Assembly: GCF_964188315.1 (NCBI RefSeq)
Contig: NC_135670.1
Coordinates: 1,240,001 to 1,304,000, forward strand
Length of the DNA stretch: 64,000 nt
Direction of reading: 5' to 3'
Origin: Podarcis muralis
Lineage: Eukaryota
Shown: positions 38,701 to 63,353 of the stretch, piece by piece
Position numbering within the stretch: position 1 is the stretch's first letter
Layout of the letters: the number at the start of each line of letters is the position of its first letter
Translations under genes and position numbers: made by a program
The notes under the pieces: generated by a model
The model's input: the letters and a program-made list of their open reading frames with translations, nothing else
Told to the model about the DNA's origin: nothing
Database searches by the model: none

Positions 38701-41700
38701 TGGGCTGCTAACCAGACCCAGTCCCCCACCTGGATGTCTTCCCCAACTCTCCTGTGCCTGTCTGCCTGCATTTTGTAGGCGTGTTTTGCGAGTTCCAAGT
38801 GCCTTCGGAGTTGCTCGTGGACCTCCTGTAACTCTGCTGCCAAGTGCTCTGCTCCCCGTGGCTCCCCCTCCCCCTTCGTCTCTAACCCCGGGAAGGTTCT
38901 GGGATGCCGCCCATTGTTGGCGAAGAATGGTGTCACTCCTGTAGACCCGTGCTTCGTGTTGTTGTAGGCAAACTCGGCCAGCGGTAGGTAGTCCACCCAG
39001 GTCGAGGGCTGTTGATTCGCATAGCATCGCAGGTACTGCTGCATGATGGCGTTGACCCTCTCCGCTTGTCCGTTGGTCTGCGGGTGTCGTGCCGACGCTA
39101 AGTTGATCTTGACGTTCAGGATGCCCAGCAGCTTCTGCCAGAAGCTCGAGATGAATTGGCGCCCCCGGTCGGACAGGATGGACCGTGGTAAGCCGTGAAC
39201 TTTGAACACGTGGTCTATGAACAGCTTGGCGGTCTGTTCCGCTGTGGCCACCTTCGCGCAAGGAATGAAGTGCGCCATCTTGGTGAACAGGTCTACGACC
39301 ACGAGTACCGCTGTTTTGCCTCGCGAGCTGGGCAGATCTGTGACAAAGTCCAGGGCCACTTTCTCCCACGGTTCGAGCGGCGTCTGTAGCGGTTCCAGCA
39401 GTCCCGCCGGCTTTCTGTGTACTGGTTTGGCCCTTTGGCATGTGTCACACCTAGAGACGTAATCCGTGACTTCTCCCCTCATCTTGGGCCACCAAAAGTC
39501 TCTGGCTACTAATTCCGCCGTCTTGTCCTTGCCGAAGTGCCCAGCGCTGGGCGCGTCGTGTAACTGTTGCAGGACTTTCGCACGGAGGTCGTCTCCCGGC
39601 ACGTAGAGAGCCCCTTTGCGGATGAGCAGTCCGTCGCGTATCTGGAACTCGTCGTCCTTCGCTGTGCCTCTTCGCACCTCCTCCATCTTGGATTGTGCGA
39701 ACGAATCCGTCTGCAGCGCGCGACGTACCGCGTCCAGGTCCACGGTGGCTGACGCGCACGCCCACGCTTTCAGTGCGAAAATGTGTTTGGCCGCCACCGG
39801 TGCCGCTTCCTCGAGATACTGCGGCTTCCTGGATAGTGCATCCGCCATGACGTTGTTGTCTCCCGGGATGTATTCTATCCGGAAGTCGAAATCCGCAAAG
39901 AACTCCGCCCAGCGGATGTGTCTCTGGTTCAGGAACTGCGCCGTGCGCCAGTACTCCAGGTTCTTATGGTCCGTGCGGACCTGCACTGTGTGTCTGGCTC
40001 CGATGAGGAAGTGCCGCCACGCCTTGAAGGCTGCATGAATGGCCAGCAACTCCCTGTCCCAGATGGTGTAGTTCTGTTCCGACTTGCTGAGTTTCCTGGA
40101 GTAGAATGTGCATGGCCTCCAGTCCCCTTGCGGATCTTGCTGCAACAGGACCGCCCCCACAGCTCTGTCCGAGGCGTCCGTTTCAACCCTCATTGGTTTG
40201 CTGGGGTTTACGTGTAGCAGCTGTTCTTCGGATGCGAAGAGACGCTTGAGTCTCTGAAAGGACTGCTCCGCCTGGTCTGTCCAGGTGAACTTCTTCTTCT
40301 TGGAGCTGAGGGTGTCCGTGAGGGCCGCCGTCTCCATCGCGAACCCCTTGATGAACTTGCGATAAAAGTTGGCGAAGCCAACGAACTTCTGGACCTCCTT
40401 CCGATTGCGCGGGCTCTTCCAGTCCAACACCGAGCGGACCTTGGTGCTGTCCATGGCGAGTCCCTTGTCGGACAGCTTGTAGCCCAGGAAATCCACCTCC
40501 GTCATGTTCAACTGGCACTTCTCCAGTTTGGCGTAAAGTCTGTGCTCCCGTAGTCTCTGCAGGACCTCCTTGACATCTCCCTCGTGAGCCTCCTGCGATT
40601 CCGAGAAGATCAGGATGTCGTCTAGGAAGCAGACGCACGTCTTGTAGAGGAGTCCCGCTAACACGTGGTGCATGAAGGCTTGGAAACAATGGGAGCCATT
40701 TTGCAGACCAAACGGCATAACTCCATATTCATAGGTGCCTAAAGGCGTAAACATGGCCGTCTTCCACTCATCGCCCTCCCGCATGCGTATAAGGTTGTAC
40801 GCCCCTCGTAGATCCAACTTGGTGAAGATTCGTCCCTTCCTCACCGTCGCGAGCAGGTCGTCGATCTTGGGCATGGGGAATGCTGTGGGCTTTGTCCTGG
40901 AATTTATGATTCTGTAATCAACTACCAGCCTCCGTTGGGGCGTGTCTTTCTTCTTCACGAAAAACATGGGACTGCCCCCCACTGCTCTGGATTCTCGGAT
41001 GAATCCCCGCTTCAAGTTGTGATCTATGAACTCCCTGAGTTCTTGCAGTTCGTCTTCAGACATGGAATACAGTTTTCCAGTCGGCAGCGTCGCCCCCGGC
41101 AGGAGGTCAATCTTGCAGTCGTAGGGCCTGTGGGGAGGCAGCTTGTCCGCTTCCTTCTCGCAGAAGACCTCCAAAAACGCCTTGTACTTGTTGGGTACCG
41201 CTTGCACCATGCCTAAGTGTAGCTGTGGTTCATCCTCTTGCCCCTCCTCTTCCTGGCTGGTCCGGATGCAGTGTTCTGCGCAGTAGGAGGAGCAGAAGGT
41301 CAATTGCCGCTGGTACCATGCTAATGCCGGGCTGTGCCTATCCAGCCAACTCATGCCCAACACTATGGGCGTGTCCGACAGGTGGGTGACGTTGAAGCTG
41401 ATGACTTCGCGGTGATTTCCAATTTGCATTACCATAGGCGGTGTTTGCTGTACCACCTGTCCTCCCAGTAGCTCTCTGCCATCGACTGTGACGATGTTTA
41501 GGGGCATTGTGGCTGGTAGGAGCGCTATGCGATGTTGCCTGATGAAGTCCACTCCTACAAAGTCTGCATTACTACCAGAGTCAATGGTAATAGGGACTTC
41601 CAGGGTGAGTCCATTGGGCAGCTGGAGCGATGCGGTGAGTTGCACCACTGGTTTGGGTGGGAGGGGGTCTGTGGGCTGTAAAATCTCTGGGGACTGCTTC

Positions 41701-44700
41701 ACTGACTCGCCTGGCTGGGCCCCAGTGCCTCTGCCTCCAACCAGGCTTCGTCGTTTCCCTGTAGCTGTTCCCCCTGCTGAACTGCTCCCCTTACTGTTGC
41801 TGAGGCTGCAGTGTGCCTCTGGATCCTCTGGGGACACTCTTTGGCCATGTGCTGCGCACTGTCGCAGATGTAGCACTTCCTGTTCCCTCTAGGAGCCTTC
41901 GCCTTGACTGCTCCTGGTGTTTGGGCTCTGGTCGCTGTCTGAGCCCTGGCACCACCTGTCTCCATCGGTTCTTCTCCCCCCTCCAGTGGAGGCGTGGATT
42001 GCGCGCGCCCTGTCTCTCTGGGTAGGAAGGGAGTTGTTCTGGCTGGTGTGCGCCCCAAGCTTCCCTCATCCCTGCTCCAAGGGCGTTCTTCCAGTCGCAC
42101 CCCTATTGCCAGCGCTCTCTGGACGACTTCTGTGGTGCTGTTAGGTCTCTATCCCCTCGCCAGCTCATCTTTCACGGCCCCATTTAGTCCCTCCCAGAAC
42201 AGATCCCTTACGGCAGCGGAGTCCTTCTCCCAGCCCAGCACATTTACTAACGCAAAAAAAGCGGGAGTGATATTGTCTCACAGTGGCTTTGCCCTGCTTC
42301 AGCCCATGCATTTCCCTCCTGGCCACATCCACATCTACCGTTGATTTAAAACAATCGTCCATAGCCTTGATAAATGCTTTTGAATCTTGGAGGGCGGGAT
42401 CATTTTCGCGCCATAAATTGCGCAGCCACGATTTAGCTTCCCCATGCAGATGAGTTATTATGAAGCCCACTTTCTCCTCCTCATCTCTAAAGTCTTTCCG
42501 AAGCAAATTGAGCGCGAAAACTATGTCTGCTCTGAAGTTAGGATACTGCTGCAGGTTCCTGTCGAAGTGCGCTACGATGCTGCCCCCCCTCTTCCCGAGG
42601 CCAACTCCCTCCGGCTTGGGTCCTGGCAGCCCCTCTTTGCCCAAACGTTCCCACCTGGTCCGCAGATCCTGGCAGAGCGCTACAGCTTCTTCCTCTCTCT
42701 TTCTGGATGCTGCTACTTCTGCGTAAAGCGTCGTGACTGCTTCTTGCAGCTCTTTCACCTTCTCCTCTGTAGTCATCTTTGCCTATCTTCGTGAGCTCGC
42801 AAAACACCAAGTTTTGCCCCTCGCTGCGCCAGCTCAATTCTATCATAAAGGGTTCAATTCTATCATAGAGACAGAGCTTACTGTCAGAGCTGCCCGAGGT
42901 CCCAGCTCACAAAGGACCAACGCCAGTTCGTTTTTATATACAAAAGTCTTTATTGAAGTTCAGTTTCACTTTCACAGCCGCGGCGCGCAGCTCTACGTCT
43001 CAAACTCTAGACCGTTGCACTGCTCCTGCCACTGCTTCCCCCTTCGGGGAGGCTAGCTGGACCTGACCTCCCCTCCGTTCCCCCACTCTCCGATAGAGGC
43101 GTGGTCAGCCCTGACTCATCTTCTCTTCCCGCTGGAGGAGACGCTGGCCCTGACACATGGGACTCTTCCCCCCCACTACGCTCTGGTGGGGAAGCTGGTC
43201 CTGATCTCCCGCTGCTGCTTTGGGAGTCCACGCTGGCCCCTTGTTTCTGGTGCGTCCCCCCTGGGACCCCCCTTGCCCTGGCCATCGGCGCCCCCTTCTG
43301 GGAATCTTCTGATTCGCTGGAGAGGCTCATGGAATCTCTCGGGTCACTGTCATACTCCCCTACGCTGCCCTCAGATTCTTCCCCTTTGCTCTCCATTTCC
43401 TCTCTCCCCTGTGCCTCTGCTCCTGAGCCCCTGACACCATGAGTGCTCAATTCTGCAACTTCTCATACTCATGTGTTTGCCCAGTTTCTTACACCAAGTA
43501 TTTGAGAACCTTTGTGTTTATCTTTTTAAAAACCTGGAGATTAATGGGCAGGCAGCAGCCCACTTGGTAGGATAACAAAAGTCAGGGGTCTTCTGAGGGG
43601 CAAATTGTCAGCAAAGAGAAAAAGTAAAATATTCATTGAAGTCGCAGTAGAGACCCTATCATAGCATTGGCTGATTCAGGAAAAATACCCAATGCCTATG
43701 CCAAAGCCGGCCTAAAACTGTAATCAATAAAGTTGTGGCCATTTAGATCACAAGCCATTGTCATTCCATTTTTGCAGCATCTGCACTTCCAAACTCCTCC
43801 CACCGGTGACCTCTGGCCCGCTGCACTTGGGTTAAAAAATAAAATGGTGTAACACCACTAGGATGCAGAAAACAAGCTGGGTCCTTAATAGTTTGAGTTC
43901 CTCACTTGAAGCTTTATAAATTTATATATTGTAACATCACGAATGGAAATCATTAATTATGTAGCTGTTGACTAAGGGATTATTATTATCATAACTGAAA
44001 TGTAACCAACATTAATTGAGATTATGGAACGCAGTGATATGAGATCGGAAACGCACCCAAACCATTATGGGGGGAGCCACTTTAACGAAAACGTATTAAT
44101 TGGAAGTTGATTGGCACTTTGATAATTGTATTATTTGGGAATGAATTGATAATTGTTATAATTTGGCTATTATTGGGGGTATATTGGAAAACTAATAAAA
44201 ATTATTTTAAAAAGCAAGTGAGCTGTGTCCTTCTGATATTTTGTTGTGAGAAACTATAAATGCAGCAACAACAGCAACAATGATTAGCAGTGAGAAAATT
44301 TTAAAACACAGCAAAAAAAAATTTAAAAAAAGAACACACAGAAGGATAGGACTGGGATTGACTGGGAAAAGATAGAAAATAAACCCCTTCAGTGTCACAC
44401 TGCCCAGCATGTGATTGGAGAGTGTTGGGTGGGGTCTCCACCTAGGCGTTCTCCTTATCTTCAATTATAATTAACAGTTGCCACATTTCAGAGACATTCT
44501 GCTCTTAAAAGGGGCTGCTCTGAGGTACAAAATGGCACAGATTTCTACAAACTGATTTTGGATGTGCTGGTCCACCCTGTAGTGATTTGTAGCTGCTTCA
44601 ACCCTATCAGGACAGGACACCAATTGGCCTGAATGGGCCTGGTTCTGTTTGGGAGTTGGCTGAATCTGCTGCACAGCCAATTATATCACACCATAGAATT

Positions 44701-47700
44701 GTTGGAAGGGATCCCAAGGGTCATTTAGTTGAACCCCCATATGTTAGTAAAACAGGAATTAGACAACCTATTCAGTTCCTTTGAATATCAAGAAGGGATA
44801 GCCCCAAAGCTTCCTGAATGCTTTCATCAAAATCAATCCTTGTCCCTCTGTCCAATGTGTTGAGCTCTTGTTTGATCCTGATGTATTCCTCATCAATATT
44901 GGAATCATTACTTTGGAAGATGATCTAGATTGGTGCTGTGGTCCCAGATCTCCCAGCCACATTTAATTTAACTGTGAGGGATATCTGTTTTAGGGTTTAA
45001 CCAGTGAAACATTTATTGACCATTGAGGAAATGAATGGAGAATCCCTGGAGTGGACTTTACCTGGTTGAACCTGTTGGGCCACACAATGGCATCATAATC
45101 CAAGCTGAAGCCTTCTTCCGAGGCAACCTGTGTGTCCATTGCTCCAACTTTGACTCTGATAAAGGACTCATTTGGCAACACAACCCAATTGATTATATCA
45201 AATCCAGTAATTAATTCCCCATTTTGGTCAAGGGAAACTTTCCCCCCAACACTATTGTTAAAAGAGACTCTTCTCAGAATTTTGTGGAGCTAGATCAAAG
45301 GGAGAATAAAAAATGGAATTCATAACGATTTGTTGAACAATTTACATTTACAAGAAGTTGATTACATTTCACATGTGAGGGCTATGGTTCATTGTTCTTT
45401 AAAAGACTATGCAGGTTAATCTTTGTCATTTTTGTATCAGGGACTTATTAGAAATGGAAATGCTCTTTGGAGAGTATTTTTAGCACTAGGAAAATGATAT
45501 GAAATCTTAAATTCAATCTGTCCACTGAGATCACAGCACTCAAAACAGTTAAATATCAGAGGATATACAAAAAAAGTGGGAATGATATGAATTGTTTTTA
45601 GAAAGAAACCAGAGCACTCCATGTCTTAGCAGTGATATGCATTTATTATAATATTTTTTATCCCACCTGCACAACTCTCAAAGCAGTTAACACCATAGGG
45701 TGCAAAATAACATAAAATGACATAAAACAAGTTCTAGATACTCACAGATATAGTAACCTTTTTTAGTTTAGGGTTGCCATATTTCAAGCCATTAAAATCT
45801 GGACAAAACAATTGTTTTGGGAGCAAAGTTGTTGAGCTTTTTTGGCAAAATTGCAGGAAAAAAACTACCATTTTTGAGCTATTTTTATGGAAAATCAGCA
45901 AAAACGGCACTGCTGACATTGGACCGATTACTTAGAAATTTGACCAATTTCCGCCCACACACTGCTGCTGGCTGCAGTATTCTGTATATGTCTGGGAAAA
46001 TCTGGACATATGGCAACCCTATGTTGGACTCTCTCATTACCTGCCAGGAGCGTAGACTTAGGAAATCCCATTTCTCTTTTTCTGCCATTGCTCTGTATTT
46101 TATTGTGTGGTGATGCATAGCATTCAGAGCATGTGCAAGAGCATATAGAGCATTGTAGACGGCATAGCTGTGGCTACTTGTCTTCATTTCAAAAACAGAT
46201 GCAGGAAGGTCCTCCAGCTTCTCCTCCCCAGTGCAACATTTGTTGTGTGCTTTCTCTAGAGATGGATGAGGGAAAACACATTCAAATGCTGCTTCCCAGA
46301 AGTCTCTGATAAAGCCATCTTCAACTTCCAAGTTAGGATTTCTCATCTGAAGAAATTTCTGGAATCCAGGAATCTCCTTTGAGTGGACTGCAAAGGATAG
46401 AGCTCCATGGAAGACTTGTACGTCCAAATATTTCACAAATGAACACGAAGCGAAATCCATCTGGGCTGTCATAACCCAGACCTTTGTCTTGGATTGCATT
46501 GGTATATCATCTGTTCCTTGAAGCTTGAGCATGGCCCGCATTACCATCATGGTATGAATTTCACCATTCACAAGCACAACATTGGCAGTGCTTTCCATAA
46601 TAATATCCAATGCTTTTGAACCTTCCTCAAGTGTTTCATAAAACTCACTGGAAAATGTTAGTTTAGGAAATGTTTCTTGAAAAGCAACGCAAATGCCTCT
46701 CTCGGCAAACATGGGAAGAACATTTTGTACAAACATCTCTCCAGTGTCGTCTTTGAGAGATAACACCCCAATCCATATCCATCTGAAATGCAGCAGGAGC
46801 TGGAGAATCCCCTTATATTGATGAGACCCCTTTGGGAACATCTGATGGAGAAAAGCTCCTTGGATGTTGCTATTTGTCACAGGAGAAGAGCCGTAGATGA
46901 GCTAAAGAGGATAATTTTTAAAAGAGGGAAGTGTCACAACATTAAGATATCAGGTTTCAACAAAACTAAATATTTTGGGGCTTTTTTCCTTTGATTAACG
47001 TTTATGGACAAGAAGGTCCCCTGCCCCCCCAAAATAATTCCATTAGGTTAATAGAATTAGAAGGGAGTGGTTTTGGAAAAGTATTGATTTAAGTGACTTT
47101 TAGTTATACAAGGCAGGTGGGTGTATATATATCAATTCATAGAAAACATCAAAGAATTTTACAAAAACTGGACATAATAACTATACCATAAAAACCCTAC
47201 AAAAAAAGAGTTAACATCAGAAATCAGGCAACTATGGTAGAAAGATGGACTCTTCATTGCCTACGTAAAACTGATGGTATATAAAACTTTTCAGCAGACA
47301 TTTACAAGTTGAAGCAGAAGACAACTGCTAAGTCCCTGTTGACTTCTGTGGAGAATGTGGCAAAAATTTTCAGTGACGCCATGAAATTACGCCCCTATAG
47401 ATCTTTAGAGCCAGCTTTGTTTCTCACATTGTCTGGATGGTTTTATCCCAAAGTACCTCCTACTATGTTTTGTTACCTGTGTTGTGTTCGGATCCATATA
47501 TGCAATGCACTCTTTTTACGCCAATAAAGGAGATTGGGTTGAATTGAATTGAGTCAATACTGTGCAAATCACTAAAAGCTTGGTTTCTTGTGGTAGTCAA
47601 ATGAGCCTTGTCAACTCATGGAATGACAAGAGATGCTCCTGCATATGATCTTAGTGATTGAGCTGAGATATAAGGGTTCAGGCAGTCCTTGAGGTACCCT

Positions 47701-50700
47701 GGACATAAGCTTTGTAAATTTGGGTGATGTATATATGCAGTTGGGATGCCAGGAATAGAACAGTGAGTCGAACAAGAAAGAAAGTANNNNNNNNNNNNNN
47801 NNNNNNNNNNNNNNNNNNNNNNNNNNNNNNNNNNNNNNNNNNNNNNNNNNNNNNNNNNNNNNNNNNNNNNNNNNNNNNNNNNNNNNNNNNNNNNNNNNNN
47901 NNNNNNNNNNNNNNNNNNNNAAGGTCAGCTAGTGTGCTGATTTATAGGAAATTATGTCATACGGATTGGCCAGTAACGGTTGATTGATTGAATACTGTGT
48001 TAAGGTGATAAAAAAAAGCGTTTTCCATTTCAAACAATGCAGATCATGGATTATGTTTCTAAAGCCTTAAGAAAGAAAGTCAATCCCTGTACAGGCAATG
48101 ACTTTCTAACTGGCATTGGCAAATCTTTCTAATTGGCATTTATGGATATTATGTTTAGAGAGGAAATGCTTATCTCCACTGTAGCACTCAGTTCTTCCCA
48201 TACTAGTACTGGTTGCTTTGTAACTTTATTCTACTGATTCAATTAACATTAGCAAATGTGATTTTTGTAAACCTTTGCATGAAATCAAAACACAAACCTC
48301 CCTCGGCAAACAGGGTAAGAATGTTTTGGACAAATCTCTCACCAGCAAATGTCTATACACTTAACTTACTTGTGGCATCTTGTACATGGACAGGACAGCT
48401 GACATGTAGAGACATAAGTCGGAGTTTGGTCCCCCAACGGCTGCTACTGGAGTGCTCTCACCATCACACTTGTAGTTGGGGGTGAGTCTGCCCCGTCCAG
48501 AGAGGAGTTCCACTGAGGCATGATAAGTCCATCCTGCGGTGAAATGGCTGTTATATATGTGGCAGCCCAGTGTGACATTGGGTAAGATATAGGGGTTTTC
48601 ATTGATCTCCTCTACAGCAAATACAAAGGCCATAATGTGCTGGTAGAGTTGTGTCACTGACCTGGAAATGAGATTCATATATAAAAATGCACAGAACTAA
48701 ATTAAACCAGAGGTGAATGAAATTGATGGCAGCTTTTGACAACAAAGAACTGGCAAGAGTGAGAGATGAAACTATGGCAAAGCTACAAGGAGCAACTGAT
48801 GAGCTGGAAGAACTCACTTGATGAATTGGGAGAATACAGGCATATGGAGAAATGAAGCAACTCAGTGATAGAGCTGGGATTCTGGGAAACATAAACGAGG
48901 TTATAAATGGAGACATGGAGAGATTTCTGGACATCTATGGAATGGAGAGAGAAAGAGCTCTCCCTACGACTTGGAGTGATTAAATCCCTGGCATGCTTTG
49001 TGGGGGGAAACAAAACCAGAAGAAATGTAAATGTAAATGGGATCAGGCTGGAAAAACATAGCAAATACTACAAGAAGTGGAAATTGAAGGTAAAGAACTG
49101 AGTGTGGAGCAATATATATTGAATATTGTCTTAATGTATGTTCACAGATGTGATACTCTTATACATACAGAGAGGGAAAGATTTATCGTTATTTAATATG
49201 GAGGTATGCTTGCTGAAATTGGTGGAGGCAAAGCTGGTATGTTTAGCTACTGAAAAACTATTGCTAACTTTTAGCAATATTATAAATTGGGAACCGTTTC
49301 TGGACTTGTTTGAAATTGAAGGTGAACACACAATAACTGGATTTCAAGATTGGAAAAATACTGGTTTATGGGTACTGGAATACTTGAATGTTGTGGAGTG
49401 AATGTTCTGAATCATTCTTTTTATGTAACTGACAGACAGAATCTGAAGCCCTTTTATTTTATTTTTTCCTGTTTTTCTTTCTTTTCTTTTCTCCTTTCTT
49501 TTTCTATAAAGATATCTAGCTGTCTCAAAAAGATCAAAGGCTTCAGGGTATAAGAAAGGAGATTCTGACTAAACATCAGGAAGAGATTCCTGATGGTAAA
49601 AACTCTTCAACAGGGTAACCGACTCCCTTGGAAGGTTGTGGACTCACCTACATTGGTAGTTTTTAAGCAGAATTTGGATGGCCATCTGTCATGGATGCTT
49701 TAGTTGAGATTCCTGCGTTGCAGGGAGTTGGACTAGATGACCCCTGGGGGTCCCTTCCAACTCAACAATTTTATGATTCTATTAATATATGCACCCAGTG
49801 TAGGAGAATGTTTGGTAACATTGGCAGACAAATATGGATGTGTTGTTCCCATGAGCAGGAGGACATATGCATTCACATCACTCAACTATACATAGCAATA
49901 CTTTAGTTACTACTGAACTCTGGAAAACTCAAAAAATAGAATGTGCTTTTCTTATATTAATTGCAATTTATTTTGAGTTAAATCCTGAGATATTTTGTAA
50001 TTAAGGTTGTGCATTTGGAAATTTCACATATTCATCACACATTTACATGTGTCTCAGAGTCATGCTTCCCACAGCAATGTGCATGTATTTTTCTAGGGCA
50101 GAAACTTAATATACCATTGTTGTTGCTACTAATATTATTACTTTTGTTACTACAAGTCCTAATCCCATTACTGTTGCTGTTGCTGCTGCTTGTACAAATG
50201 ATAAGAGCAGGGGGAAGATTTTTAAAATGAGTTGAGGACATCGTAGTTCTCATTATTCTAAGGATAACCTAAAACTCACTATTTGAAAGTGATGAACCAT
50301 TCCTTTCAGCATAGGTGACCGATAAACAATAAATGAATCCAAAACTAAAAATGGGAAATATGGCGGGGGGGGGGGGAGTCTCTACACAAATAATGTGGAA
50401 AGTACTAAAAGCTGTTGATTTTGAAACAGAAATAGTTTAAAAGAGCTACTCACAGTTGTGTGTTTGCTCACTACGAACAGACACTGTTTATAGTTACCAA
50501 TATTGATTGAGCAAATTTACCCTCAACCATAAACACTGGAACTGTTAAAAGGGAAAAAATGGTGCATAATGATGAAATAATATAGTTAAAGCTATAGTTT
50601 TCCCTGTAGTGATGTATGGAAGTGAAGGCTGATTGCCGAAGAATTGATGCTTCTGAATTCTGGTGCTGGAGGAGACTCTTGAGAGTCCCATGGACTGCAA

Positions 50701-55995: not shown

Positions 55996-56080
55996 ATGGG
56001 GAAGCCAGCGCTAGCAAAGCGTGCAGCATTCAGAAGACATGCAGTGTCCAGAAAGCGTAAAAGAAAAGAAAAGGAAACTG
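55996..56080 (+). CDS. C-type lectin candidate first coding exon (cytoplasmic tail)
   Basis: aggATGG good Kozak; [28 protein letters not shown]; donor G|gtgatc is weak; acceptor ttccacag at 55981. Confidence 0.4.
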
Positions 56081-59000
56081 GTGATCTGTATACAGCGCAG
56101 TCATATGGGTTGAGGTTTCTCATAAAGTAGAGGAATGCACAGGAAAGGGAAGTTGATGGAGAGGCGGGCAGGGAGTGGAACCGGTCATGTTGTGCCAGGG
56201 AGGAGTGCGGAGAAAAGCCCACACAGCTCTTTGGGTGCCAGAGGTCCACTAAGCCCCATAGAAACCCCAGGGGTGAGCCCACTCTTTGCTGCTGGCTGTT
56301 GTGTTCCTTTAGTGTGTGCAGTCAGGAATGGCTGTACAATTAGGCAGAATGAGGCAGTTGCCTCAAGTAGTAGGTGTTGGGGTGGGTAGAGATGTGTAGA
56401 CCAGGGGGCAGCAAACTTTTTTGGCAGGGGGCCGGTCCACTGTCCCTCAGACCTTGTGGGGGGTCTTGAATTATTATTTTTTTTAAAAAAAATGAACGAA
56501 TATTTTGAAAAATAATAGTGAACGAATTCCGATGCACACTGCATAGAATTAATCCGTTCCAGACTTTTAAAAACAAACCCTAAAACAATTTAACACGTTT
56601 TTGCAATTTAACATGAATTTTCCTATCTAACGAGACCATTGAGCCGTAAAATGAAAGCAATAAACAATGTACTGTACTGCAAAATAAATAAGGCAGTATT
56701 GTAGATGATAAAAATTAAAATTACGGTAATTTTTTTTCCTTATCTGCACTGATGATAGTCATTGTTTGGATGGGGGGGGGGGTCCTCACCTGGGTTTGGT
56801 GCATAGCTGTCAACTTTTCCCTTTTCTTGCGAGGAATCCTATTCAGAATAAGGGAATTTCCCTTTAAAAAGGGGAAAGTTGACAGCTATGGTCTGGTGCT
56901 GCGTTGTGACCTGCTGGGCCTCCTGCTGCCGGCACCTCTTCCGCGCTTCGGGGGTGGGATGGGGGCCCCCCTGCTGGCAGTGGAGGCCAAATCGCCACTG
57001 CACCGGCGGCAGGACTGTGGGAAGGTCTTTGGAGGCCCTCCCACCTTTCGCAGCCCTCCCACCGGCAGGGATTATCTTGGCGCTGCGTTTCATTGGTAGA
57101 GCTGCTGCAGCATCAGCTCTACCAATGAAACACAGTGCTGGGATGAGGGATGACCCTGTCACTGCGTTGGCTCTACCAGTGAAACACAATGCTGGGGTCA
57201 GCCCTCAGCCCTCATCCCGGCGCTGCGTTTCACCCTCAGACTCTCGGAGGGTCCTTAAATGGCCATGTGGCCAAGATTTACAACCCTGTCTGGCCTGACT
57301 CGGCCCGCGGACCATTGTTTGCTGACCCCTGGTGTAGACCACACAAGCTGCACTGCACCTCCTCAGCTAGTCTGCTGCCCCATCAGCAGCATAGAAATAG
57401 GAGCCAATGGCCAGCCCAGCTCAGCTTGTGTATGTGGAATTGTGTGTATGGAGGGAGCATCTTGTCATTTGCCTGGGGGGGCAGAAAGTAGTATCAAAGG
57501 CTACTGTCTTCTGATCCAGACATTGGTCAGAAAAGTTTCCTCAAGCAGCGAGGCATCTCGGCTTGCTTCTTCCACCTGCTTATCCTCCCAAGTGCCCACT
57601 CCTTGAACAGTTGAGTGTCCCTGGCTGATGGCTGCCACAGCACATGGAAACCCTTTTCCCTGGGGTGGGAATGGTATGTTGACTATTGATGGCTAAAGTA
57701 AAAATTTTCTTTCTTCAAGCATCAGCTTTTCACGAGTTGGTTACTTACTTCAAATCTCCAACGGGTGAAAGATTTTTCATACTTGAGATTTTCATCATTG
57801 CTGCCTTGACACTGCTGATTTATATGCTATGTAAGTACATAATTGGCGTATGCTGATACTACTGTCGTGGGCTTTGCTTCAATGCCAATAGCATTTCCAA
57901 AAAGAGATGGCAGGATCCACCTTCCCTTTACCCCTTTCATCTCTCTTTGATTTCCAGGGGTGAGTTACAGCTGCCACCCAGTGAGAGCAATGGCACTGTT
58001 TTGTTCTCCCTGAAAAAGTGAGTTCCAGCACTTGGAAGAGAGACATAGGCTAACACAAGTCCCTGGGACACCCTGGACAATTCCCTTTCCCGGTTTGCAA
58101 TTTTCTCCTCCTTTCCCAACTAATCCTCATTTGCCGTGGGAGAGCCCCCATTCCTGGTTTCGCCACGCTGCCCTGTAGCGTTCCCAAAGCAAGGAAGGAT
58201 TGGACTCTGATTAATAAAATACACACGAGGCTTGACCAGCAAGACTCTGGGAGGAGTGTGTATAATAATAATAATTCTCCACCCCTCGGCCCAGGTCGTT
58301 TTTACACAGTGTTGGTAAGAACCAATCAGATTTCCTCTGAGCATTTCAAAACCCCCATGTGGGGACAAAGTTAAAAGTTAACTACAAAGAGCTAATTTGA
58401 ACATGTATAGTAATCCAGAGTAAATTATTGCACTTGGGCAAAAAAAAAAAAAAAAAAAGAAAAAAGAAAAAAAAAAGAGAGGCACAAATACAAGATGGGT
58501 GACACCTGGCTTGAGAGCAGTACATGTGAAAAGGATCTAGGAGTCTTGGTTGACCACAAACTTGACATGAGCCAACAGTGTGACGCGGCAGCTAAAAAAG
58601 CCAATGCAATTCTGGGCTGCATCAATAGGAGTATAGCATCTAGATCAAGGGAAGTAATAGTGCCCCTGTATTCTGCTCTGGTCAGACCTCACCTGGAGTA
58701 CTGTGTCCAGTTCTGGGCACCACAGTTCAAGAAGGACACTGACAAACTGGAACGTGTCCAGAGGAGGGCAACCAAAATGGTCAAAGGCCTGGAAACGATG
58801 CCTTATGAGGAACGGCTAAGGGAGCTGGGCATGTTTAGCCTGGAGAAGAGGAGGTTAAGGGGTGATATGATAGCCATGTTCAAATATATAAAAGGATGTC
58901 ATATAGAGGAGGGAGAAAGGTTGTTTTCTGCTGCTCCAGAGAAGCAGACACGGAGCAATGGATCCAAACTACAAGAAAGAAGATTCCACCTAAACATGAG

Positions 59001-61049
59001 GAAGAACTTCCTGACAGTAAGAGCTGTTTGACAGTGGAATTTGCTGCCAAGGAGTGTGGTGGAGTCTCCTTCTTTGGAGGTCTTTAAGCAGAGGCTTGAC
59101 AACCATATGTCAGGAGTGCTCTGATGGTGTTTCCTGCTTGGCAGGGGGTTGGACTCGATGGCCCTTGTGGTCTCTTCCAACTCTATGATTCTATGAAATA
59201 AAAGAGGAAGCAAGGAGGAATGCTTTTCGGAAACCCCAGAGGTCATAAACAGGAGTAAACAGGAGAGGAAGGATAAGGTAGTATTTACCATCTCCTTGTG
59301 AACGATTAACAAACTACATCAAAGCTACCTTCTAGCTTTAGGACCGAGGATGCCAGATGAACAACTGGTCTGTAGTTTAGAATGCTGATATGTGCCTGTC
59401 AGGCAGAGAAATAGGACAGAGACGCAGAGGCGTGGATTGATCAGAAATCATATCAAAATGGCTCAAACCCAGTCAACGCAATGCTTTCATTGCTGACACA
59501 AATGGCTTGCTCCATAATTTTTATAACTCCTCATAGCAAACCCACCTGATCACTACATGGCCTCTGCTAGTGCTCCAGTCCCATGAAGGAAAGTGCTTGG
59601 GGGAAACAGGCTGGGGAGGATAAGGCCATGGCCAATGTGGGTGAGTCCAGAGCCTACCTAAATATCGAGATATATGCTGGGGTTTTTATCAGCTAAAATT
59701 AACCAGGACTCAGTTCTGGCCCCTCTCAGGTGGGTGCCCCTGCCATGTGTTCCGGTGCCTCTTTTTCTAGTAAAATAGCACTGGATAGATGAACACAAGG
59801 CCTATTTGGCTAGATAATTCTTTTTTAAAGGGCACTCCAAAGTAAGCAAAGCGCAGGGGGAGGGAACCAAATGACCAAGAATTTCCATATTTTAAGCATG
59901 AGGCAGCCTGGCAAATGCAAGTCTGTAGGACAAAGAGGGCAGGTGTATCGAGACACCCCAAAATCTAAAGCTTTCTAAGGAAGGCCAACCATCTGGTGAC
60001 AGAAGTAGCAGGCCAAATGGACACAGGACTTCAGACCACCAGGGCAGCTTAAATCAAGGCACTGGAACCCTCAGTCTAAGGGCTGAGAGCAGAAAATATT
60101 AATAGAAGTCATTTTCATGTTTTTGTTGATTTGACTTTTTATTTGTCCTTCTCCATAAGGTCCCGGGGCATGTTTGTTGTACAAGTCGGCAATTTAAATT
60201 CAATATTAATAGCAGTTTGAAACCAAGTATCCCCTCCCCCAGTTTATCAGACTAGCGTGCTAGAACACAATTTCTTCCTTTCTTTTCTACCTACTTCCTT
60301 CTTAGATCAGAAGGAACTGGAAAAAAGACAGGAGTTTCAAATGGCAGTGGATATGATTCGAACCGTTCTGGTTGGCATTGATCCAGTCTATATAGACAAG
60401 GAGGGTAAGCATTTTATATGAACATCCACACTTCTGCTGTAACATGTTTAAATTAAACAGAGTTCAATTCTTGTAGTTCACTTTGGGATTCAAATTGTGT
60501 CAGCAAAACATATATTCAGTGAAACTCATCACCCAACAGAGTTTAGCACTTTTTCATTGCTCAGCAGGAAGAAAAGCAGACAGTCACGATTCTGACATCT
60601 CCCCACTAGAAATGCTGTCCTCCCCCATCAAACTGTAATTCACAGTGTTTGTGCTAGTGCAAGATTTTAGCACTAGCACAAGGGAATGTTTTCCCCACTT
60701 CTCTCTCATGCCATCACCAAAGCTGCTCTCCTGGGGGGAACGGGACTTCAGAACAAATTGGAGGGAAGGGGGCTGAAGATTGCATTGCACAAGGAAAAAT
60801 CCTTGCACTGACATTATGTCCTACTTAGCTCTATGTGGGATGCAACCCAGAATTCAGCAGAAAAAGAGTTTTGGTGCTTCTATTTTCTTAGATCTCACAA
60901 AGCATAACTGAAAACTGCAAAGTATTCTTTGTATATTTGGCTTTCCTGTGGGACTCGAGGCGGGAATTGATTTGTGACCCTGTGATTCCCAGCAGAAAAG
61001 GAGGACATAGGAGGGGAACATTAGAGATACTTCATGAGCCACTTTTAAA

Positions 61050-61096
<47 letters not shown>

Positions 61097-63353
61097 TAGT
61101 AATTTATTATTTATACCCCGCCCATCTGGCTGAGTTTCCCCAGCCACTCTGGGCGGCTCCCAATCAGGTGATAGAAACAGTACAACAGAGTTAAATATTA
61201 AAAACTTCCCTGAACAGGGCTGCCTTCAGATGTCTTTTAAATATAGGATAGCTGGTTATTTCCTTCACATCTGAAGGGACGGTTTTCCACAGGGTGGGCA
61301 CCACTACTGAGAAGACCCTAGAGGGACACGGGTGGCGCTGTGGGTAAAACCTCAGCGCCTAGGACTTGCCGATTACAAGGTCGGCAGTTCGAATCCCCGC
61401 GGCAGGGTGCACTCCCGTCGTTCAGTCCCAGCGCCTGCCCACCTAGCAGTTTGAAAGCACCTCCAGGTGCAAGTAGATAAATAGGTACCACTTTATAGCG
61501 GGAAGGTAAACGGCGTTCCATGTGCTGCGCTGGCTCGCCAGATGCAGTTTGTCACGCTGGCCACGTGACCCGGAAGTGTCTGCGGACCGCGCTGGCTCCC
61601 GGCCTATAGAGTGAGATGAGCGCACAACCCTAGAGTCTGTCAAGACTGGCCTGTACGGGCAGGGGTACCTTTACCTTTTAACCTCACTTCTCGAAGTGAG
61701 GGAACCGCCAGAAGGCCCTCGGTGCTGGATCTCAGTGTCCGGGCTGAACGATGGGGGTGGAGATGCTTCTTCAGGTCTACTGGACCGAGGCCAGTCTTTG
61801 GTCTGATCAAGCTGCAGGATTCTTTTGAGGCTTTTCGTTGGTGATCTCAGCCACAGAGAATCAAGTCTGCCCTCATATTCACAAGAACCCCATCCTGGAG
61901 CTCTGCTTCTTGTTTCAGACTTGAGTGTTTTTAAGTGTTTGGAAATGGTTTCCTGATATTTGCAGATTGTTATTTCAGATACTCCTGCCTTAAAAACTGT
62001 TTCAATTTTTTTTAGACTTAGAAATACTTGCTGCAGCTCAAAACATATCAGAGGAAATGCGGTATTTTGCCAATAAAAATGATGAACTGCAAAAAGATAT
62101 TGGTAAGCTATCCCACGATGCTGAAGAATTGTAGTGCATTGGGAACCTGTCCTGAGTCTGCACCAGCTGAAAGCTCCTCCTCTATCTGAAAACTCTTAGA
62201 GCCACCCTAGGGAAACATCAGAGATATTCAGATCAGCTCTCCTGAACTGTTGAGATTTAGCTTCTATTGCGAGGAAGGACAAGCCTGTCATCAGAAAGAA
62301 GCCCTCATGCCCACTCACACAGTGAATTGACCCCTTGGCCACTGAATACATAATTGGTAAAGCGATTATAAAAATGTCTATAAAGCTTTAGATGTAAAAG
62401 CAAAGAATGGGAATGAATGCCTATCACATCACTTGTACATAGAAGCAAGCGAAAGATGGTCAGCAGCAAAAGACACCTTTTGTGAGAGTTGTATAATGCC
62501 ATTTCCCCTCTTTCACTTTGTCCTTGGGAAATATCATTGCCTTTAAAGACATATGCCAAAACCAGGCCTAAACTGAAAAGGATCCAGAAAATCCTGATTG
62601 AAATGGATCTAGAAAATCAGTTTCCTCCAAGAGCACCTGGATCTGGTCCACAACCACCCGCTCAAGAACCTTGCCCAGGAAGGGGAGATTAGCAACGTCA
62701 GTTACGTTAATTTTCTGAGCCCAGGGAAGATTTCTGAAGGAGTGGTTTTACCACTGCCTCCTTCAGTCTAGGGTTCCCCTTCCTGCCTCCACAGAGAGCC
62801 TAGAGAGAGAAAGAGAATTTTGATAAGCCACAGCTACTTCCCCTCCCCAATCTTCAAGTCTGCCCTGATGTTGTCCTGAGTATCCAGGTGGAAACAAATA
62901 GGTGAGGCCCCTGAGGTTCAGATAAGGCCTGTTAGGGGACGTACATCTTTTCTCTATTCCCTCAAATAAAAGGTGCACTCCCAGCTATGTCCACCCAGGT
63001 ATTTACTGCAGTATCAGCATGGCCTGAAGAGTTAATGTTGTTCTTGTTTTAATCTTCCTGAGCTTCCTAGATATGGTATCACACGGCCACAGAAATGAAC
63101 TTAACAAAAATAATTGAAATCTGCACAGACATACGAGGTGGTTCCCATTAAATTCCCTATTTTTCTCTCTCTGCTTCCTCCATACATGGCTTGACTTAAA
63201 GATATCCTTACTGAAAACTTGAACGATGGCTGGGTTATATATGAAAGGACCTTATATTGGTTTTCTAGTGAGGTAGCCTCATGGATGGATGCCCAAAAAA
63301 ATTGTGAGCGGGAAGGCGCCAACCTCATTTCTGCGGAAACAGTGGAAGAACAG
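55996..63353 (+). CDS. type II C-type lectin receptor (langerin/CLEC4F-like), 5' part; continues beyond window end
   Basis: Exons 55996-56080 (tentative), 57720-57830 (TM), 60306-60404 and 62016-62102 (neck), 63202-63353 (CTLD exon 1) join through phase-1 GT-AG introns with no stop. Confidence 0.75.
56402..57331. mobile_element. hAT (Charlie-like) non-autonomous element, 930 bp
   Basis: TIRs cagggggcagcaaac / gtttgctgacccctg; perfect TSD gtgtagac. Confidence 0.87.
56802..56890. mobile_element. 89-bp MITE nested in the hAT element
   Basis: TIRs catagctgtcaacttt / aaagttgacagctatg; TSD gtttggtg/gtctggtg. Confidence 0.8.
57720..57830 (+). CDS. C-type lectin transmembrane exon
   Basis: ttttctttcttcaag|CA...CTA T|gtaagt; only the phase-1 frame is open: [36 protein letters not shown]. 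Confidence 0.72.
58420..59196 (+). mobile_element. CR1 LINE 3' fragment (copy 3)
   Basis: ORF 58495-59031 nearly identical to copies 1-2, premature CGA>TGA; expanded internal A-tract; ATTCTATG tail. Confidence 0.94.
60306..60404 (+). CDS. C-type lectin neck exon 1
   Basis: Long pyrimidine tract ...ttccttcttag|AT CAG AAG GAA...AAG GAG G|gtaagc; [32 protein letters not shown]. Confidence 0.78.
61050..61790 (-). mobile_element. L2 3' fragment with (AAT)n tail, split by a Sauria SINE
   Basis: Reverse complement of the L2 3' sequence at 33680-34007 on both sides of 61322-61679. Confidence 0.75.
61322..61679 (+). mobile_element. Sauria SINE, full length
   Basis: gggacacgggtggcgctgtggg head, gttcgaatccc B-box, ACCTTT tail. 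Confidence 0.9.
62016..62102 (+). CDS. C-type lectin neck exon 2
   Basis: ttcaattttttttag|AC TTA GAA...GAT ATT G|gtaagc; [28 protein letters not shown] (N-glycan sequon NIS). Confidence 0.78.
63202..63353 (+). CDS. C-type lectin domain exon 1
   Basis: 152 bp, phase 1 to 0; [50 protein letters not shown]|gtgagc fits the CTLD pattern GW..Y...Y.FS....W..A...C...G..L.S....EEQ. Confidence 0.87.

What the first reader, a model, noticed from the sequence alone, without database searches (positions are those of the whole stretch)
55996..63353. Hidden langerin/CLEC4F-like type II C-type lectin gene at the edge of the V2R cluster
Seen: small exons with strong splice sites join into ...[47 protein letters not shown]...[83 protein letters not shown]. 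None appears in the ORF track. Established: a TM exon, phase-1 coiled-coil neck exons and a 152-nt first CTLD exon ending EEQ are the layout of group II lectins (CD209, CLEC4, CD207); lacking the N-terminal Cys pair before GW is a langerin/CLEC4F trait. Inference: a squamate lectin receptor transcribed divergently from V2R gene D, with a short, diverged neck.
Basis: partly seen in the sequence, partly recalled or inferred. Interest (0 to 1): 0.72.

Follow-up and report, generated by a model that had tools for sequence, protein, structure and literature searches.

The report
Wall-lizard CD209-like lectin receptor gene
The small exons are real and belong to an intact seven-exon wall-lizard gene for a membrane-anchored C-type-lectin-fold receptor. 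It belongs to a lizard-specific, CD209-like family whose sugar/calcium site is degraded. Public databases already hold it, wrongly modelled in this species, so it is a useful re-annotation rather than a new kind of gene.

Summary

- **Rest of the gene:** the same Podarcis muralis chromosome, fetched as L001, holds the two missing lectin-domain exons about 0.7 and 1.8 kb past the window end. The seven exons sum to 798 nt, or 265 codons.
- **Orthologues:** P. raffonei and P. lilfordi have 265-aa orthologues with identical exon lengths and splice sites.
- **Transcription:** one RNA-type run holds a spliced exon 4-exon 5 contig that runs on into exon 6.
- **Existing annotation:** the gene is not truly hidden. 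RefSeq has it in P. muralis as "uncharacterized LOC144325866", a faulty 216-aa model without exons 1, 2 and 7. In P. raffonei it is "CLEC17A-like".
- **Family:** about eight paralogue lineages, found only in Lacertidae and Rhineura. The nearest other proteins recovered (from a truncated list) are at most 32% identical.
- **Langerin/CLEC4F label:** not specifically supported, because DC-SIGNR and DC-SIGN score higher.
- **Sugar site:** EPN survives, but the Glu ligand is His and WND is WMA, and there is an extra C-x4-C pair. Canonical calcium-dependent sugar binding is therefore unlikely.
- **Location:** the gene lies inside the V2R cluster, not at its edge. Two paralogues have no V2R within 10 kb.

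Interest is modest. The scan had not noted this gene before.

The parts
55996..56080 (+). Exon 1: start codon and basic cytoplasmic tail (28 codons + 1 nt, phase 1)
   Evidence: Read. Identical in protein to the N-terminus of the P. raffonei and P. lilfordi orthologues P0176 and P0180. 100% and 98.8% nt identity in L004 and L005.
57720..57830 (+). Exon 2: rest of the tail and the signal-anchor TM helix, with a conserved Glu inside the helix. A tandem acceptor 6 nt downstream gives the 263-aa isoform.
   Evidence: tblastn with paralogues P0037 and P0072. Family alignment A1. Isoforms X1 and X2.
60306..60404 (+). Exon 3: first neck exon (99 nt, phase 1-1)
   Evidence: Contained in RefSeq model P0004 and in the orthologues. 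Not covered by contigs of run X1, which remains unexplained.
62016..62102 (+). Exon 4: second neck exon (87 nt, phase 1-1). It has a heptad pattern and a conserved N-glycosylation sequon, NIS.
   Evidence: E4-E5 joint 62101->63201 with GT..AG in an X1 contig at depth 156. Helix 99-135 in the orthologue model.
63202..63353 (+). Exon 5: end of the neck and the first third of the CTLD (152 nt, ends in phase 0)
   Evidence: An X1 contig covers it with no differing letter and runs on into exon 6. Exons 6 and 7 lie beyond the window at L001 19902-20011 and 21042-21195, window-equivalent 64659-64768 and 65799-65952.
57600..57698 (+). Transcribed stretch just upstream of exon 2, either retained intron 1 or an internal start. 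An in-frame ATG at 57689 is continuous with exon 2.
   Evidence: X1 contig record 1, depth 66. The frame was read. Its status is unresolved.

Best explanation
This is the 5' five-sevenths of an intact, transcribed Podarcis muralis gene (RefSeq locus LOC144325866). It encodes a 265-codon type II membrane protein with these parts: a short basic cytoplasmic tail; a signal-anchor helix with a conserved Glu; a roughly 75-residue alpha-helical neck built from two symmetrical phase-1 exons, with five clean heptads running into the domain; and one C-terminal short-form C-type lectin-like domain spread over three exons. It is one of about eight paralogue lineages of a fast-evolving, CD209/CLEC4-like family known only from Lacertidae and the amphisbaenian Rhineura. 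Shown: gene structure, intactness, orthologues, family membership, the spliced E4-E5-E6 transcript, and position inside a V2R cluster. Inferred: the protein sits on the cell surface as a coiled-coil oligomer, probably a trimer as in langerin and CLEC4F. It probably recognises ligand without the canonical calcium-coordinated sugar site, because three of the five site-2 ligands are replaced (Glu to His, Asn-Asp of WND to Met-Ala) and a new C-x4-C pair staples that loop. It most likely acts as an immune-cell pattern or self-ligand receptor. The V2R neighbours are most likely incidental.
For: Exons and phases. CTLD identity: E5 against PDB; the locus's own RefSeq product P0004, which holds E5+E6, scores Lectin_C 43.1 bits against a cut-off of 22.6; orthologue P0176 scores 60.7 bits over model positions 3-107 of 107. 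Downstream exons E6 and E7 have AG/GT sites, a stop codon and a nearby AATAAA. The seven exons sum to 798 nt. Orthologues of 265 aa have identical exon lengths and splice sites. Spliced RNA: joint 62101->63201 GT..AG at depth 156, exon 5 with no differences, and a loose end after 63353 that matches the start of E6 with 1 mismatch. Flanking intron is covered at depth about 3 only, which fits RNA. Family: 25-26 proteins at E<1e-10, all from Podarcis, Zootoca or Rhineura. Tree: the orthologue pair is sister to the 'CLEC4M-like X1' gene with support 99/97. Calcium-site reading: HMMER alignment of E7 to SIGNR1 and family alignment A1. Neck: hydrophobic residues at a and d positions read from the sequence, and a continuous helix 99-135 in the model. 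The fold search returns group II CRDs, with the langerin and CLEC4F trimers aligning over neck plus CRD. V2R neighbours are shown. Paralogue loci L002 and L003 have no V2R within 10 kb.
Against: Three bulk RNA runs of the species (X22-24) show no reads on any exon, so expression is tissue-restricted or low. X1 is coded 'RNA?' and its tissue is unknown. X1 contigs do not cover exon 3. The E1-E2, E2-E3 and E3-E4 junctions rest on database gene models and homology, not on reads seen here. The P. muralis RefSeq model skips exon 7. dN/dS is 0.5-0.9 between orthologues (not significantly below 1) and 1.08 against paralogue P0037, so purifying selection is not demonstrated. The structure model is weak (mean pLDDT 60.5, and the site loop is below 50), so the disulfide and the oligomeric state are inferences.
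Confidence: 0.85

Rival explanations
1. It is a functional mannose/fucose-type calcium-dependent lectin working like langerin or DC-SIGN, as the retained EPN motif and the reader's label suggest.
For: EPN is present in exon 7. The type II, neck and CRD layout is present. The N-terminal Cys pair is absent, as in langerin. The langerin and CLEC4F trimers align over neck plus CRD in the fold search.
Against: The Glu two residues before Cys2 is His, and WND is WMA. The Asp of WND is Ala or Thr in every family member, and EPN itself drifts to EPS, SPH, EPK and EPG in paralogues. Langerin and CLEC4F score about four orders of magnitude worse than DC-SIGNR.
Confidence: 0.08
2. It is a transcribed but functionally decaying copy, a young pseudogene-in-waiting in a birth-and-death family. 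Its intact frame is only a matter of recency.
For: dN/dS is near 1. Three RNA runs show no reads. The P. muralis RefSeq model is aberrant. Exon 3 is absent from X1 contigs.
Against: All seven exons, all splice sites, all six Cys and the invariant Trp/Gly core are intact in three species. The lineage is older than the split of these species and has a stem branch of 0.27 changes per site without any disruption. By my rough estimate, at dS of about 0.2 between paralogues a neutral 795-nt frame would be expected to have acquired several stop codons. A spliced transcript is present at depth about 156 in X1.
Confidence: 0.08
3. It is functionally tied to its V2R neighbours, expressed in vomeronasal neurons as an escort or co-receptor in the way H2-Mv class I molecules accompany mouse V2Rs.
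For: It is embedded head-to-head and tail-to-tail between V2R genes, and this position is conserved in P. raffonei.
Against: Paralogues P0037 and P0167 have no V2R sequence within 10 kb. No expression data from vomeronasal tissue were available.
Confidence: 0.05

Closest known systems
CD209 / CLEC4M (DC-SIGN, DC-SIGNR) and mouse SIGNR paralogues
   Same: Type II orientation, helical neck, and a single C-terminal CRD. Among group II receptor CRDs these are the best sequence matches to the orthologue's CTLD (DC-SIGNR 8e-15); three chains of other kinds score as high or higher (a fish lectin entry, 9kpl; an NKG2-D tandem construct; a type II antifreeze protein). EPN is retained. Both are multigene and fast-evolving. 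RefSeq names most family members 'CD209 antigen-like'.
   Different: There is no N-terminal Cys pair. The neck is made of separate 87-99-nt phase-1 exons. From my memory, not tested here, the mammalian neck is 23-residue repeats. The Glu ligand is replaced by His and WND by WMA, and there is an extra C-x4-C pair. Identity is only about 28-30%.
Langerin (CD207) and CLEC4F
   Same: Short-form CTLD without the N-terminal Cys pair, as I recall the langerin and CLEC4F sequences. A helical neck runs straight into the CRD, and the trimer structures 3kqg and 6jjj align over neck plus CRD (173 and 153 columns).
   Different: Sequence scores are lower than for DC-SIGN(R), Mincle and CLEC4A. The neck is much shorter. 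The calcium/sugar site is not conserved. There is no evidence of orthology.
Calcium-independent C-type lectin-like receptors (NK-receptor group V; calcium-independent type II antifreeze protein)
   Same: CTLD fold with the calcium site lost. NKG2-D and type II antifreeze protein are among the top single-domain sequence hits. Fast evolution in multigene arrays.
   Different: This family keeps a long coiled-coil neck and a vestigial EPN, and it clusters by sequence with group II. No ITIM or ITAM motif, and no basic residue in the TM helix, was seen. The TM helix carries a Glu instead.

Membership tests
C-type lectin-like domain (Pfam PF00059 Lectin_C) | Profile match above Pfam's gathering score | tested here: met
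   Taken singly, E5 scores 15.7 bits and E6 17.9 bits (both below the 22.6 cut-off) and E7 has no Pfam hit at E<=0.01. The locus's own RefSeq product P0004, which holds E5+E6, scores 43.1 bits. Orthologue P0176 scores 60.7 bits over model positions 3-107 of 107.
C-type lectin-like domain (Pfam PF00059 Lectin_C) | Four core cysteines (C1-C4) and the WIGL-type core motif | tested here: met
   C1 lies in E5. C2, C3 and C4 lie in E7. FWIGV lies in E6. All are invariant in alignment A1.
Group II C-type lectin receptors (CD209, CLEC4, ASGR, CD23, CD207) | Type II topology: N-terminal tail, one signal-anchor helix, helical neck, single C-terminal CRD | tested here: met
   E1-E2 give the tail and a roughly 20-residue hydrophobic helix. 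E3-E4 form the neck, with hydrophobic a and d positions at 7-residue spacing. The model shows helices 45-66 and 99-135, then the CRD.
Group II C-type lectin receptors (CD209, CLEC4, ASGR, CD23, CD207) | Complete calcium site 2 (EPN or QPD, Glu before Cys2, WND) for sugar binding | tested here: not met
   EPN is present, but Glu is replaced by His and WND by WMA. The Asp is lost in all 15 aligned family members.
Group II C-type lectin receptors (CD209, CLEC4, ASGR, CD23, CD207) | CRD split over three exons | tested here: met
   E5, E6 and E7 are 152, 110 and 154 nt. Paralogue P0037 has the same boundaries. That mammalian members share this layout is from my memory and was not tested.
Langerin / CLEC4F subgroup | Closest relatives by sequence or phylogeny are CD207 or CLEC4F | tested here: not met
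   Langerin scores 9e-11 to 4e-10 and CLEC4F 3e-10, against DC-SIGNR at 8e-15. No tree with mammalian references could be built, because none was available by reference.
Langerin / CLEC4F subgroup | Absence of the N-terminal (C0-C0') cysteine pair | tested here: met
   There is no Cys before GW, and Leu or Phe stands at the usual CYYFS cysteine position, in the window gene and in the whole family. The trait alone is not diagnostic.
Lacertoidea-specific CD209-like family (RefSeq 'CD209 antigen-like', 'CLEC4M-like', 'CLEC17A-like' of Podarcis, Zootoca, Rhineura) | Collinear seven-exon layout, conserved neck sequon, C-x4-C before the Trp of the former WND, C-terminal CKKVP..WL | tested here: met
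   Per-exon tblastn against P0037, P0072, P0107 and P0061. Alignment A1. Tree.

The most novel reading that the evidence does not exclude
The Lacertoidea-specific family, this gene included, may have turned a CD209-type sugar receptor into a calcium-independent, disulfide-stapled ligand-binding module under diversifying selection. In the CTLD exons, non-synonymous change exceeds synonymous change between paralogues. That would be a squamate analogue of the mammalian NK-type lectin-like receptors that arose independently from group II stock. In the boldest version, the copy fixed inside the V2R cluster is expressed in vomeronasal neurons and works with V2Rs.
Probability: 0.12. Interest if true: 0.6.

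Novelty: new member of a known kind. Interest (0 to 1): 0.27.

Why it matters
The practical result is a corrected gene model. The P. muralis RefSeq entry (216 aa, 'uncharacterized') lacks the membrane anchor and the last third of the lectin domain, although the genome encodes an intact 265-codon receptor matching its P. raffonei and P. lilfordi orthologues.

Biologically, it documents a little-noticed multigene family of group II-type receptors, known so far only from lacertid lizards and Rhineura. The family has lost the canonical sugar/calcium site as a whole and evolves at dN/dS near 1. That is of some interest for reptile innate immunity and for how lectin folds change ligand class.

It does not open a new category, and the V2R neighbourhood shows no sign of being functional.

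Tried and rejected
- **Word search with exon 5 alone:** no candidate. The 50-aa query only admits proteins of 28-87 aa, so the blank says nothing.
- **Bulk RNA runs X22-24:** zero depth on all exons. All reads fell on a CR1-like fragment and SINE-like repeats in the introns, so these runs give no information on splicing.
- **A second E3-like neck exon in the window, to explain the X1 contig ending GTDKFYEDKD:** no match at 3 mismatches or fewer. The best match is exon 3 itself, with 9 of 30 mismatches. The same string occurs in paralogue P0162, so the contig is probably a paralogue's. This is left unexplained.
- **V2R linkage as a family trait:** rejected. There is no V2R sequence within 10 kb of paralogues P0037 and P0167.
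- **Purifying selection between orthologues:** too few changes, with Fisher p of 0.28-0.79.
- **Literature:** no paper in the library describes this family.
- **Structure model:** too weak in the binding loop to test the extra disulfide.
- the spliced model was never joined, and never searched or folded as one sequence. Exons were searched one by one by reference. Whole-protein tests used natural database proteins (P0004, P0176, P0163, P0037).
- **Masked stretch:** the N run at window 47787-47920 was not filled or printed, and its counterpart in L001 (3030-3163) was left out of my sequence reads and tblastn searches. Whole-locus pattern and exon look-ups did pass over L001 without returning its letters.
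Full report
**What is in the window.** On the + strand there are five short exons:

| Exon | Window coordinates | Length | Content |
|---|---|---|---|
| E1 | 55996-56080 | 85 nt | opens with ATG; basic tail |
| E2 | 57720-57830 | 111 nt | rest of tail, TM helix |
| E3 | 60306-60404 | 99 nt | neck |
| E4 | 62016-62102 | 87 nt | neck |
| E5 | 63202-63353 | 152 nt | end of neck, start of lectin domain |

E2-E5 follow an AG, and all five precede a GT. E1 to E4 each end one base into a codon, so E2, E3 and E4 are symmetrical phase-1 exons. E2 holds a roughly 20-residue hydrophobic helix. E4 plus the start of E5 place Ile, Ile, Phe, Leu, Leu at 7-residue spacing and Ala, Met, Asn, Ile, Leu at the intervening d positions. 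That makes five heptads running into the Gly-Trp that opens the lectin domain (direct reading).

**Is it a lectin domain?** E5 alone scores below Pfam's cut-off (Lectin_C 15.7 bits, E 0.026). It nevertheless matches 139 solved C-type lectin chains at E<1, including asialoglycoprotein receptor, CLEC4A, CLEC10A, CLEC4C, CD69, CLEC4F and NKG2-D. The word search with the 50-residue exon was blank, which the length rule makes uninformative. I therefore ran the exhaustive HMMER search with E5. It returned a 216-aa protein, P0004, that is 100% identical over E5. This is RefSeq XP_077776764.1, 'uncharacterized protein LOC144325866 [Podarcis muralis]'. The search also returned single-domain relatives at 48-64% identity, named 'CD209 antigen-like protein C/E' or 'CLEC4M-like', from Podarcis, Zootoca and Rhineura. 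Because it is this locus's own product, it provides a legitimate above-threshold Pfam test (43.1 bits against a cut-off of 22.6).

**The rest of the gene.** Looking up P0004 returned 32 kb of the same P. muralis chromosome (L001; L001 coordinate = window coordinate minus 44757). Per-exon tblastn with the paralogues found two further exons beyond the window end:

- **E6** at L001 19902-20011 (110 nt, AG/GT). It carries the FWIGV core.
- **E7** at L001 21042-21195 (154 nt, AG acceptor, TAA stop, with AATAAA about 200 nt downstream).

The seven exons sum to 798 nt, which is 265 codons plus the stop.

The RefSeq P. muralis model is wrong at both ends. Its first residues come from an exon at window 54758 plus a read-through of the intron before E3, and it has no membrane anchor. 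After E6 it jumps to an exon 1 kb past E7, which gives a meaningless tail.

P. raffonei (XP_053225406, 265 aa, 'CLEC17A-like isoform X1') and P. lilfordi (CAI7934805, 265 aa) have full-length orthologues. In their genomes all seven exons have the same lengths, 92-100% nucleotide identity and the same splice dinucleotides. A tandem acceptor 6 nt into E2 explains the 263-aa isoform.

Whole-protein tests used the natural database proteins.

**Transcription.** The single reads call gave two results.

- Three bulk RNA runs of the species (X22-24) have no read on any exon. All their depth lies on a CR1-like fragment (58.4-59.2 kb) and on SINE-like repeats (61.1-61.8 kb) in the introns.
- Run X1 is from a closely related organism label, held as contigs and coded 'RNA?'. 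It has a 537-nt contig at depth 156 that covers E5 without a single difference and skips 62102-63201 with GT..AG ends, which is the E4-E5 junction.
- The same run shows a 255-letter loose end behind 63353. Its first 30 letters match the start of E6 with one mismatch.
- Unique intron sequence next to E5 is covered at depth about 3 only. That is the pattern of RNA, not DNA.

The nearest paralogue differs from E5 at eight or more residues, so this contig belongs to this gene's orthologue. Three points remain unexplained. X1 has no contig over E3. One X1 contig joins an E3-like end typical of paralogue P0162 to sequence that fits the window from 62015. Another contig covers 57600-57698, just upstream of E2, where an in-frame ATG at 57689 is continuous with E2.

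**Family and placement.** Word searches with paralogue P0037 and with the family alignment found 25-26 proteins at E<1e-10. All are from Podarcis muralis, P. raffonei, P. lilfordi, Zootoca or Rhineura. Among the other proteins recovered, the best are teleost lectins at 32% identity or less over neck plus CTLD. That list is truncated and was ranked on E5 only, so absence from other squamates is suggestive, not proven.

A maximum-likelihood tree of 25 natural proteins puts the orthologue pair as sister to the 'CLEC4M-like X1' gene (support 99/97), among about eight Podarcis paralogue lineages. The names RefSeq gives these proteins vary widely: CD209-like A, C, D, E and 2, CLEC4M-like, CLEC10A-like, CLEC17A-like, perlucin-like and MRC1-like. 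This shows that no mammalian orthologue stands out.

With the orthologue's CTLD, the best single-domain solved structures score as follows:

| Solved structure | E-value |
|---|---|
| Fish lectin entry 9kpl | 1e-16 |
| NKG2-D tandem construct | 2e-15 |
| Type II antifreeze protein | 6.5e-15 |
| DC-SIGNR | 8e-15 |
| Mincle | 1e-13 |
| DC-SIGN | 2e-13 |
| Langerin | about 1e-10 |
| CLEC4F | 3e-10 |

The langerin/CLEC4F label therefore rests only on the missing N-terminal Cys pair. A low-confidence AlphaFold model of the orthologue (mean pLDDT 60.5; CTLD core 74-87; site loop below 50) retrieves group II CRDs. The langerin and CLEC4F trimer entries align over neck plus CRD. That fits a neck-to-CRD arrangement like theirs but does not discriminate between subfamilies.

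**Binding site.** The HMMER alignment of E7 to SIGNR1 gives these equivalences:

- EPN aligns with EPN.
- The Glu two residues before Cys2 aligns with His.
- Trp-Asn-Asp aligns with Trp-Met-Ala.
- There is a five-residue insertion carrying two extra cysteines four residues apart, directly before that Trp.

In the 15-sequence alignment the Asp is Ala or Thr in every member. The Asn position is variable. EPN itself drifts in several paralogues. The extra Cys pair is present in all lacertid sequences but not in Rhineura. Three of the five canonical site-2 ligands are thus gone. I infer that calcium-dependent sugar binding has been lost across the family, and that the loop is held by a new disulfide. 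The disulfide is an inference and was not shown. A Glu inside the membrane helix and an N-glycosylation sequon in E4 are nearly invariant.

**Selection.** All comparisons were counted exon by exon, without joining.

- Between orthologues, dN/dS is 0.51, 0.72 and 0.87, with only 12-27 substitutions. None is significantly below 1.
- Against the gene of paralogue P0037 (E2-E7), dS is 0.21, dN is 0.23 and omega is 1.08. Non-synonymous change exceeds synonymous change in all three CTLD exons and is lower in neck exon E4.

All copies keep open frames, splice sites and core residues, so I read this as birth-and-death evolution with diversifying or relaxed selection on the ligand face. That is typical of immune receptor arrays, but it was not formally tested.

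**Neighbourhood.** The window holds several V2R genes, with 7tm_3 and ANF_receptor exons. The lectin gene is head-to-head with the minus-strand V2R, whose coding region ends at about window 51152. It is tail-to-tail with a further V2R 2.8 kb beyond E7. P. raffonei also has V2Rs on both sides. The gene therefore lies inside the cluster, not at its edge. Paralogues P0037 and P0167, on two other chromosomes, have no V2R sequence within 10 kb. I therefore treat the adjacency as incidental. No vomeronasal expression data could be examined.

**Verdict.** The gene is real, intact and at least somewhere transcribed. It encodes a type II C-type-lectin-fold receptor. It is a new, mis-annotated member of a known kind, the group II CD209/CLEC4-like receptors, within a lineage-specific family that has a degraded sugar site. 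No paper in the held library describes the family. Interest is modest.

Noticed in passing
window 37552-42776 (- strand): A Ty3/gypsy-type retroelement (gag ORF 42165-42776; 1390-aa pol ORF 37704-41876; GC 0.50-0.59) lies between the 7TM exon (34882-35781) and the ligand-binding exon (45885-46880) of the minus-strand V2R. It is therefore inside that gene's intron.
   Followed up: partly
window 58495-59196 and 61100-61800: A CR1-like LINE 3' fragment in lectin intron 2 and SINE-like repeats in intron 3 collect hundreds of RNA reads from many genomic copies. They are the only covered parts in runs X22-24.
   Followed up: partly
window 57714-57725: A tandem acceptor (..aag|CATCAG|CT..) at exon 2 accounts for the 265-aa and 263-aa isoforms annotated in P. 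raffonei.
   Followed up: yes
window 57600-57698 and ATG at 57689: An X1 contig at depth 66 covers the stretch just upstream of exon 2. An in-frame ATG at 57689 would give a short alternative N-terminus continuous with exon 2. This is either a retained intron or an internal promoter.
   Followed up: partly
L005 11723-11833 (P. lilfordi exon 2): Nine amino-acid changes cluster in the TM exon of the P. lilfordi orthologue, and most of them match the TM of the sister paralogue P0183. This looks like gene conversion between paralogues.
   Followed up: partly
L001 10001-10036 and 22217-22318: The RefSeq P. muralis model XP_077776764.1 uses these odd first and last exons and skips intact exons 1, 2 and 7. 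The model should be corrected.
   Followed up: yes
L004 1-3085 versus L001 1-6395: The V2R upstream of the lectin gene is on the + strand in P. raffonei but on the - strand in P. muralis. This points to local rearrangement or copy turnover in the cluster.
   Followed up: no
paralogues P0164, P0157, P0049 (P. raffonei): Some paralogues carry a duplicated E3-like 33-residue neck exon. Because the neck exons are symmetrical phase-1 exons, neck length can change by whole exons.
   Followed up: partly
window 7120-8526 (- strand): A LINE reverse-transcriptase ORF (RVT_1, E 2.5e-35).
   Followed up: no
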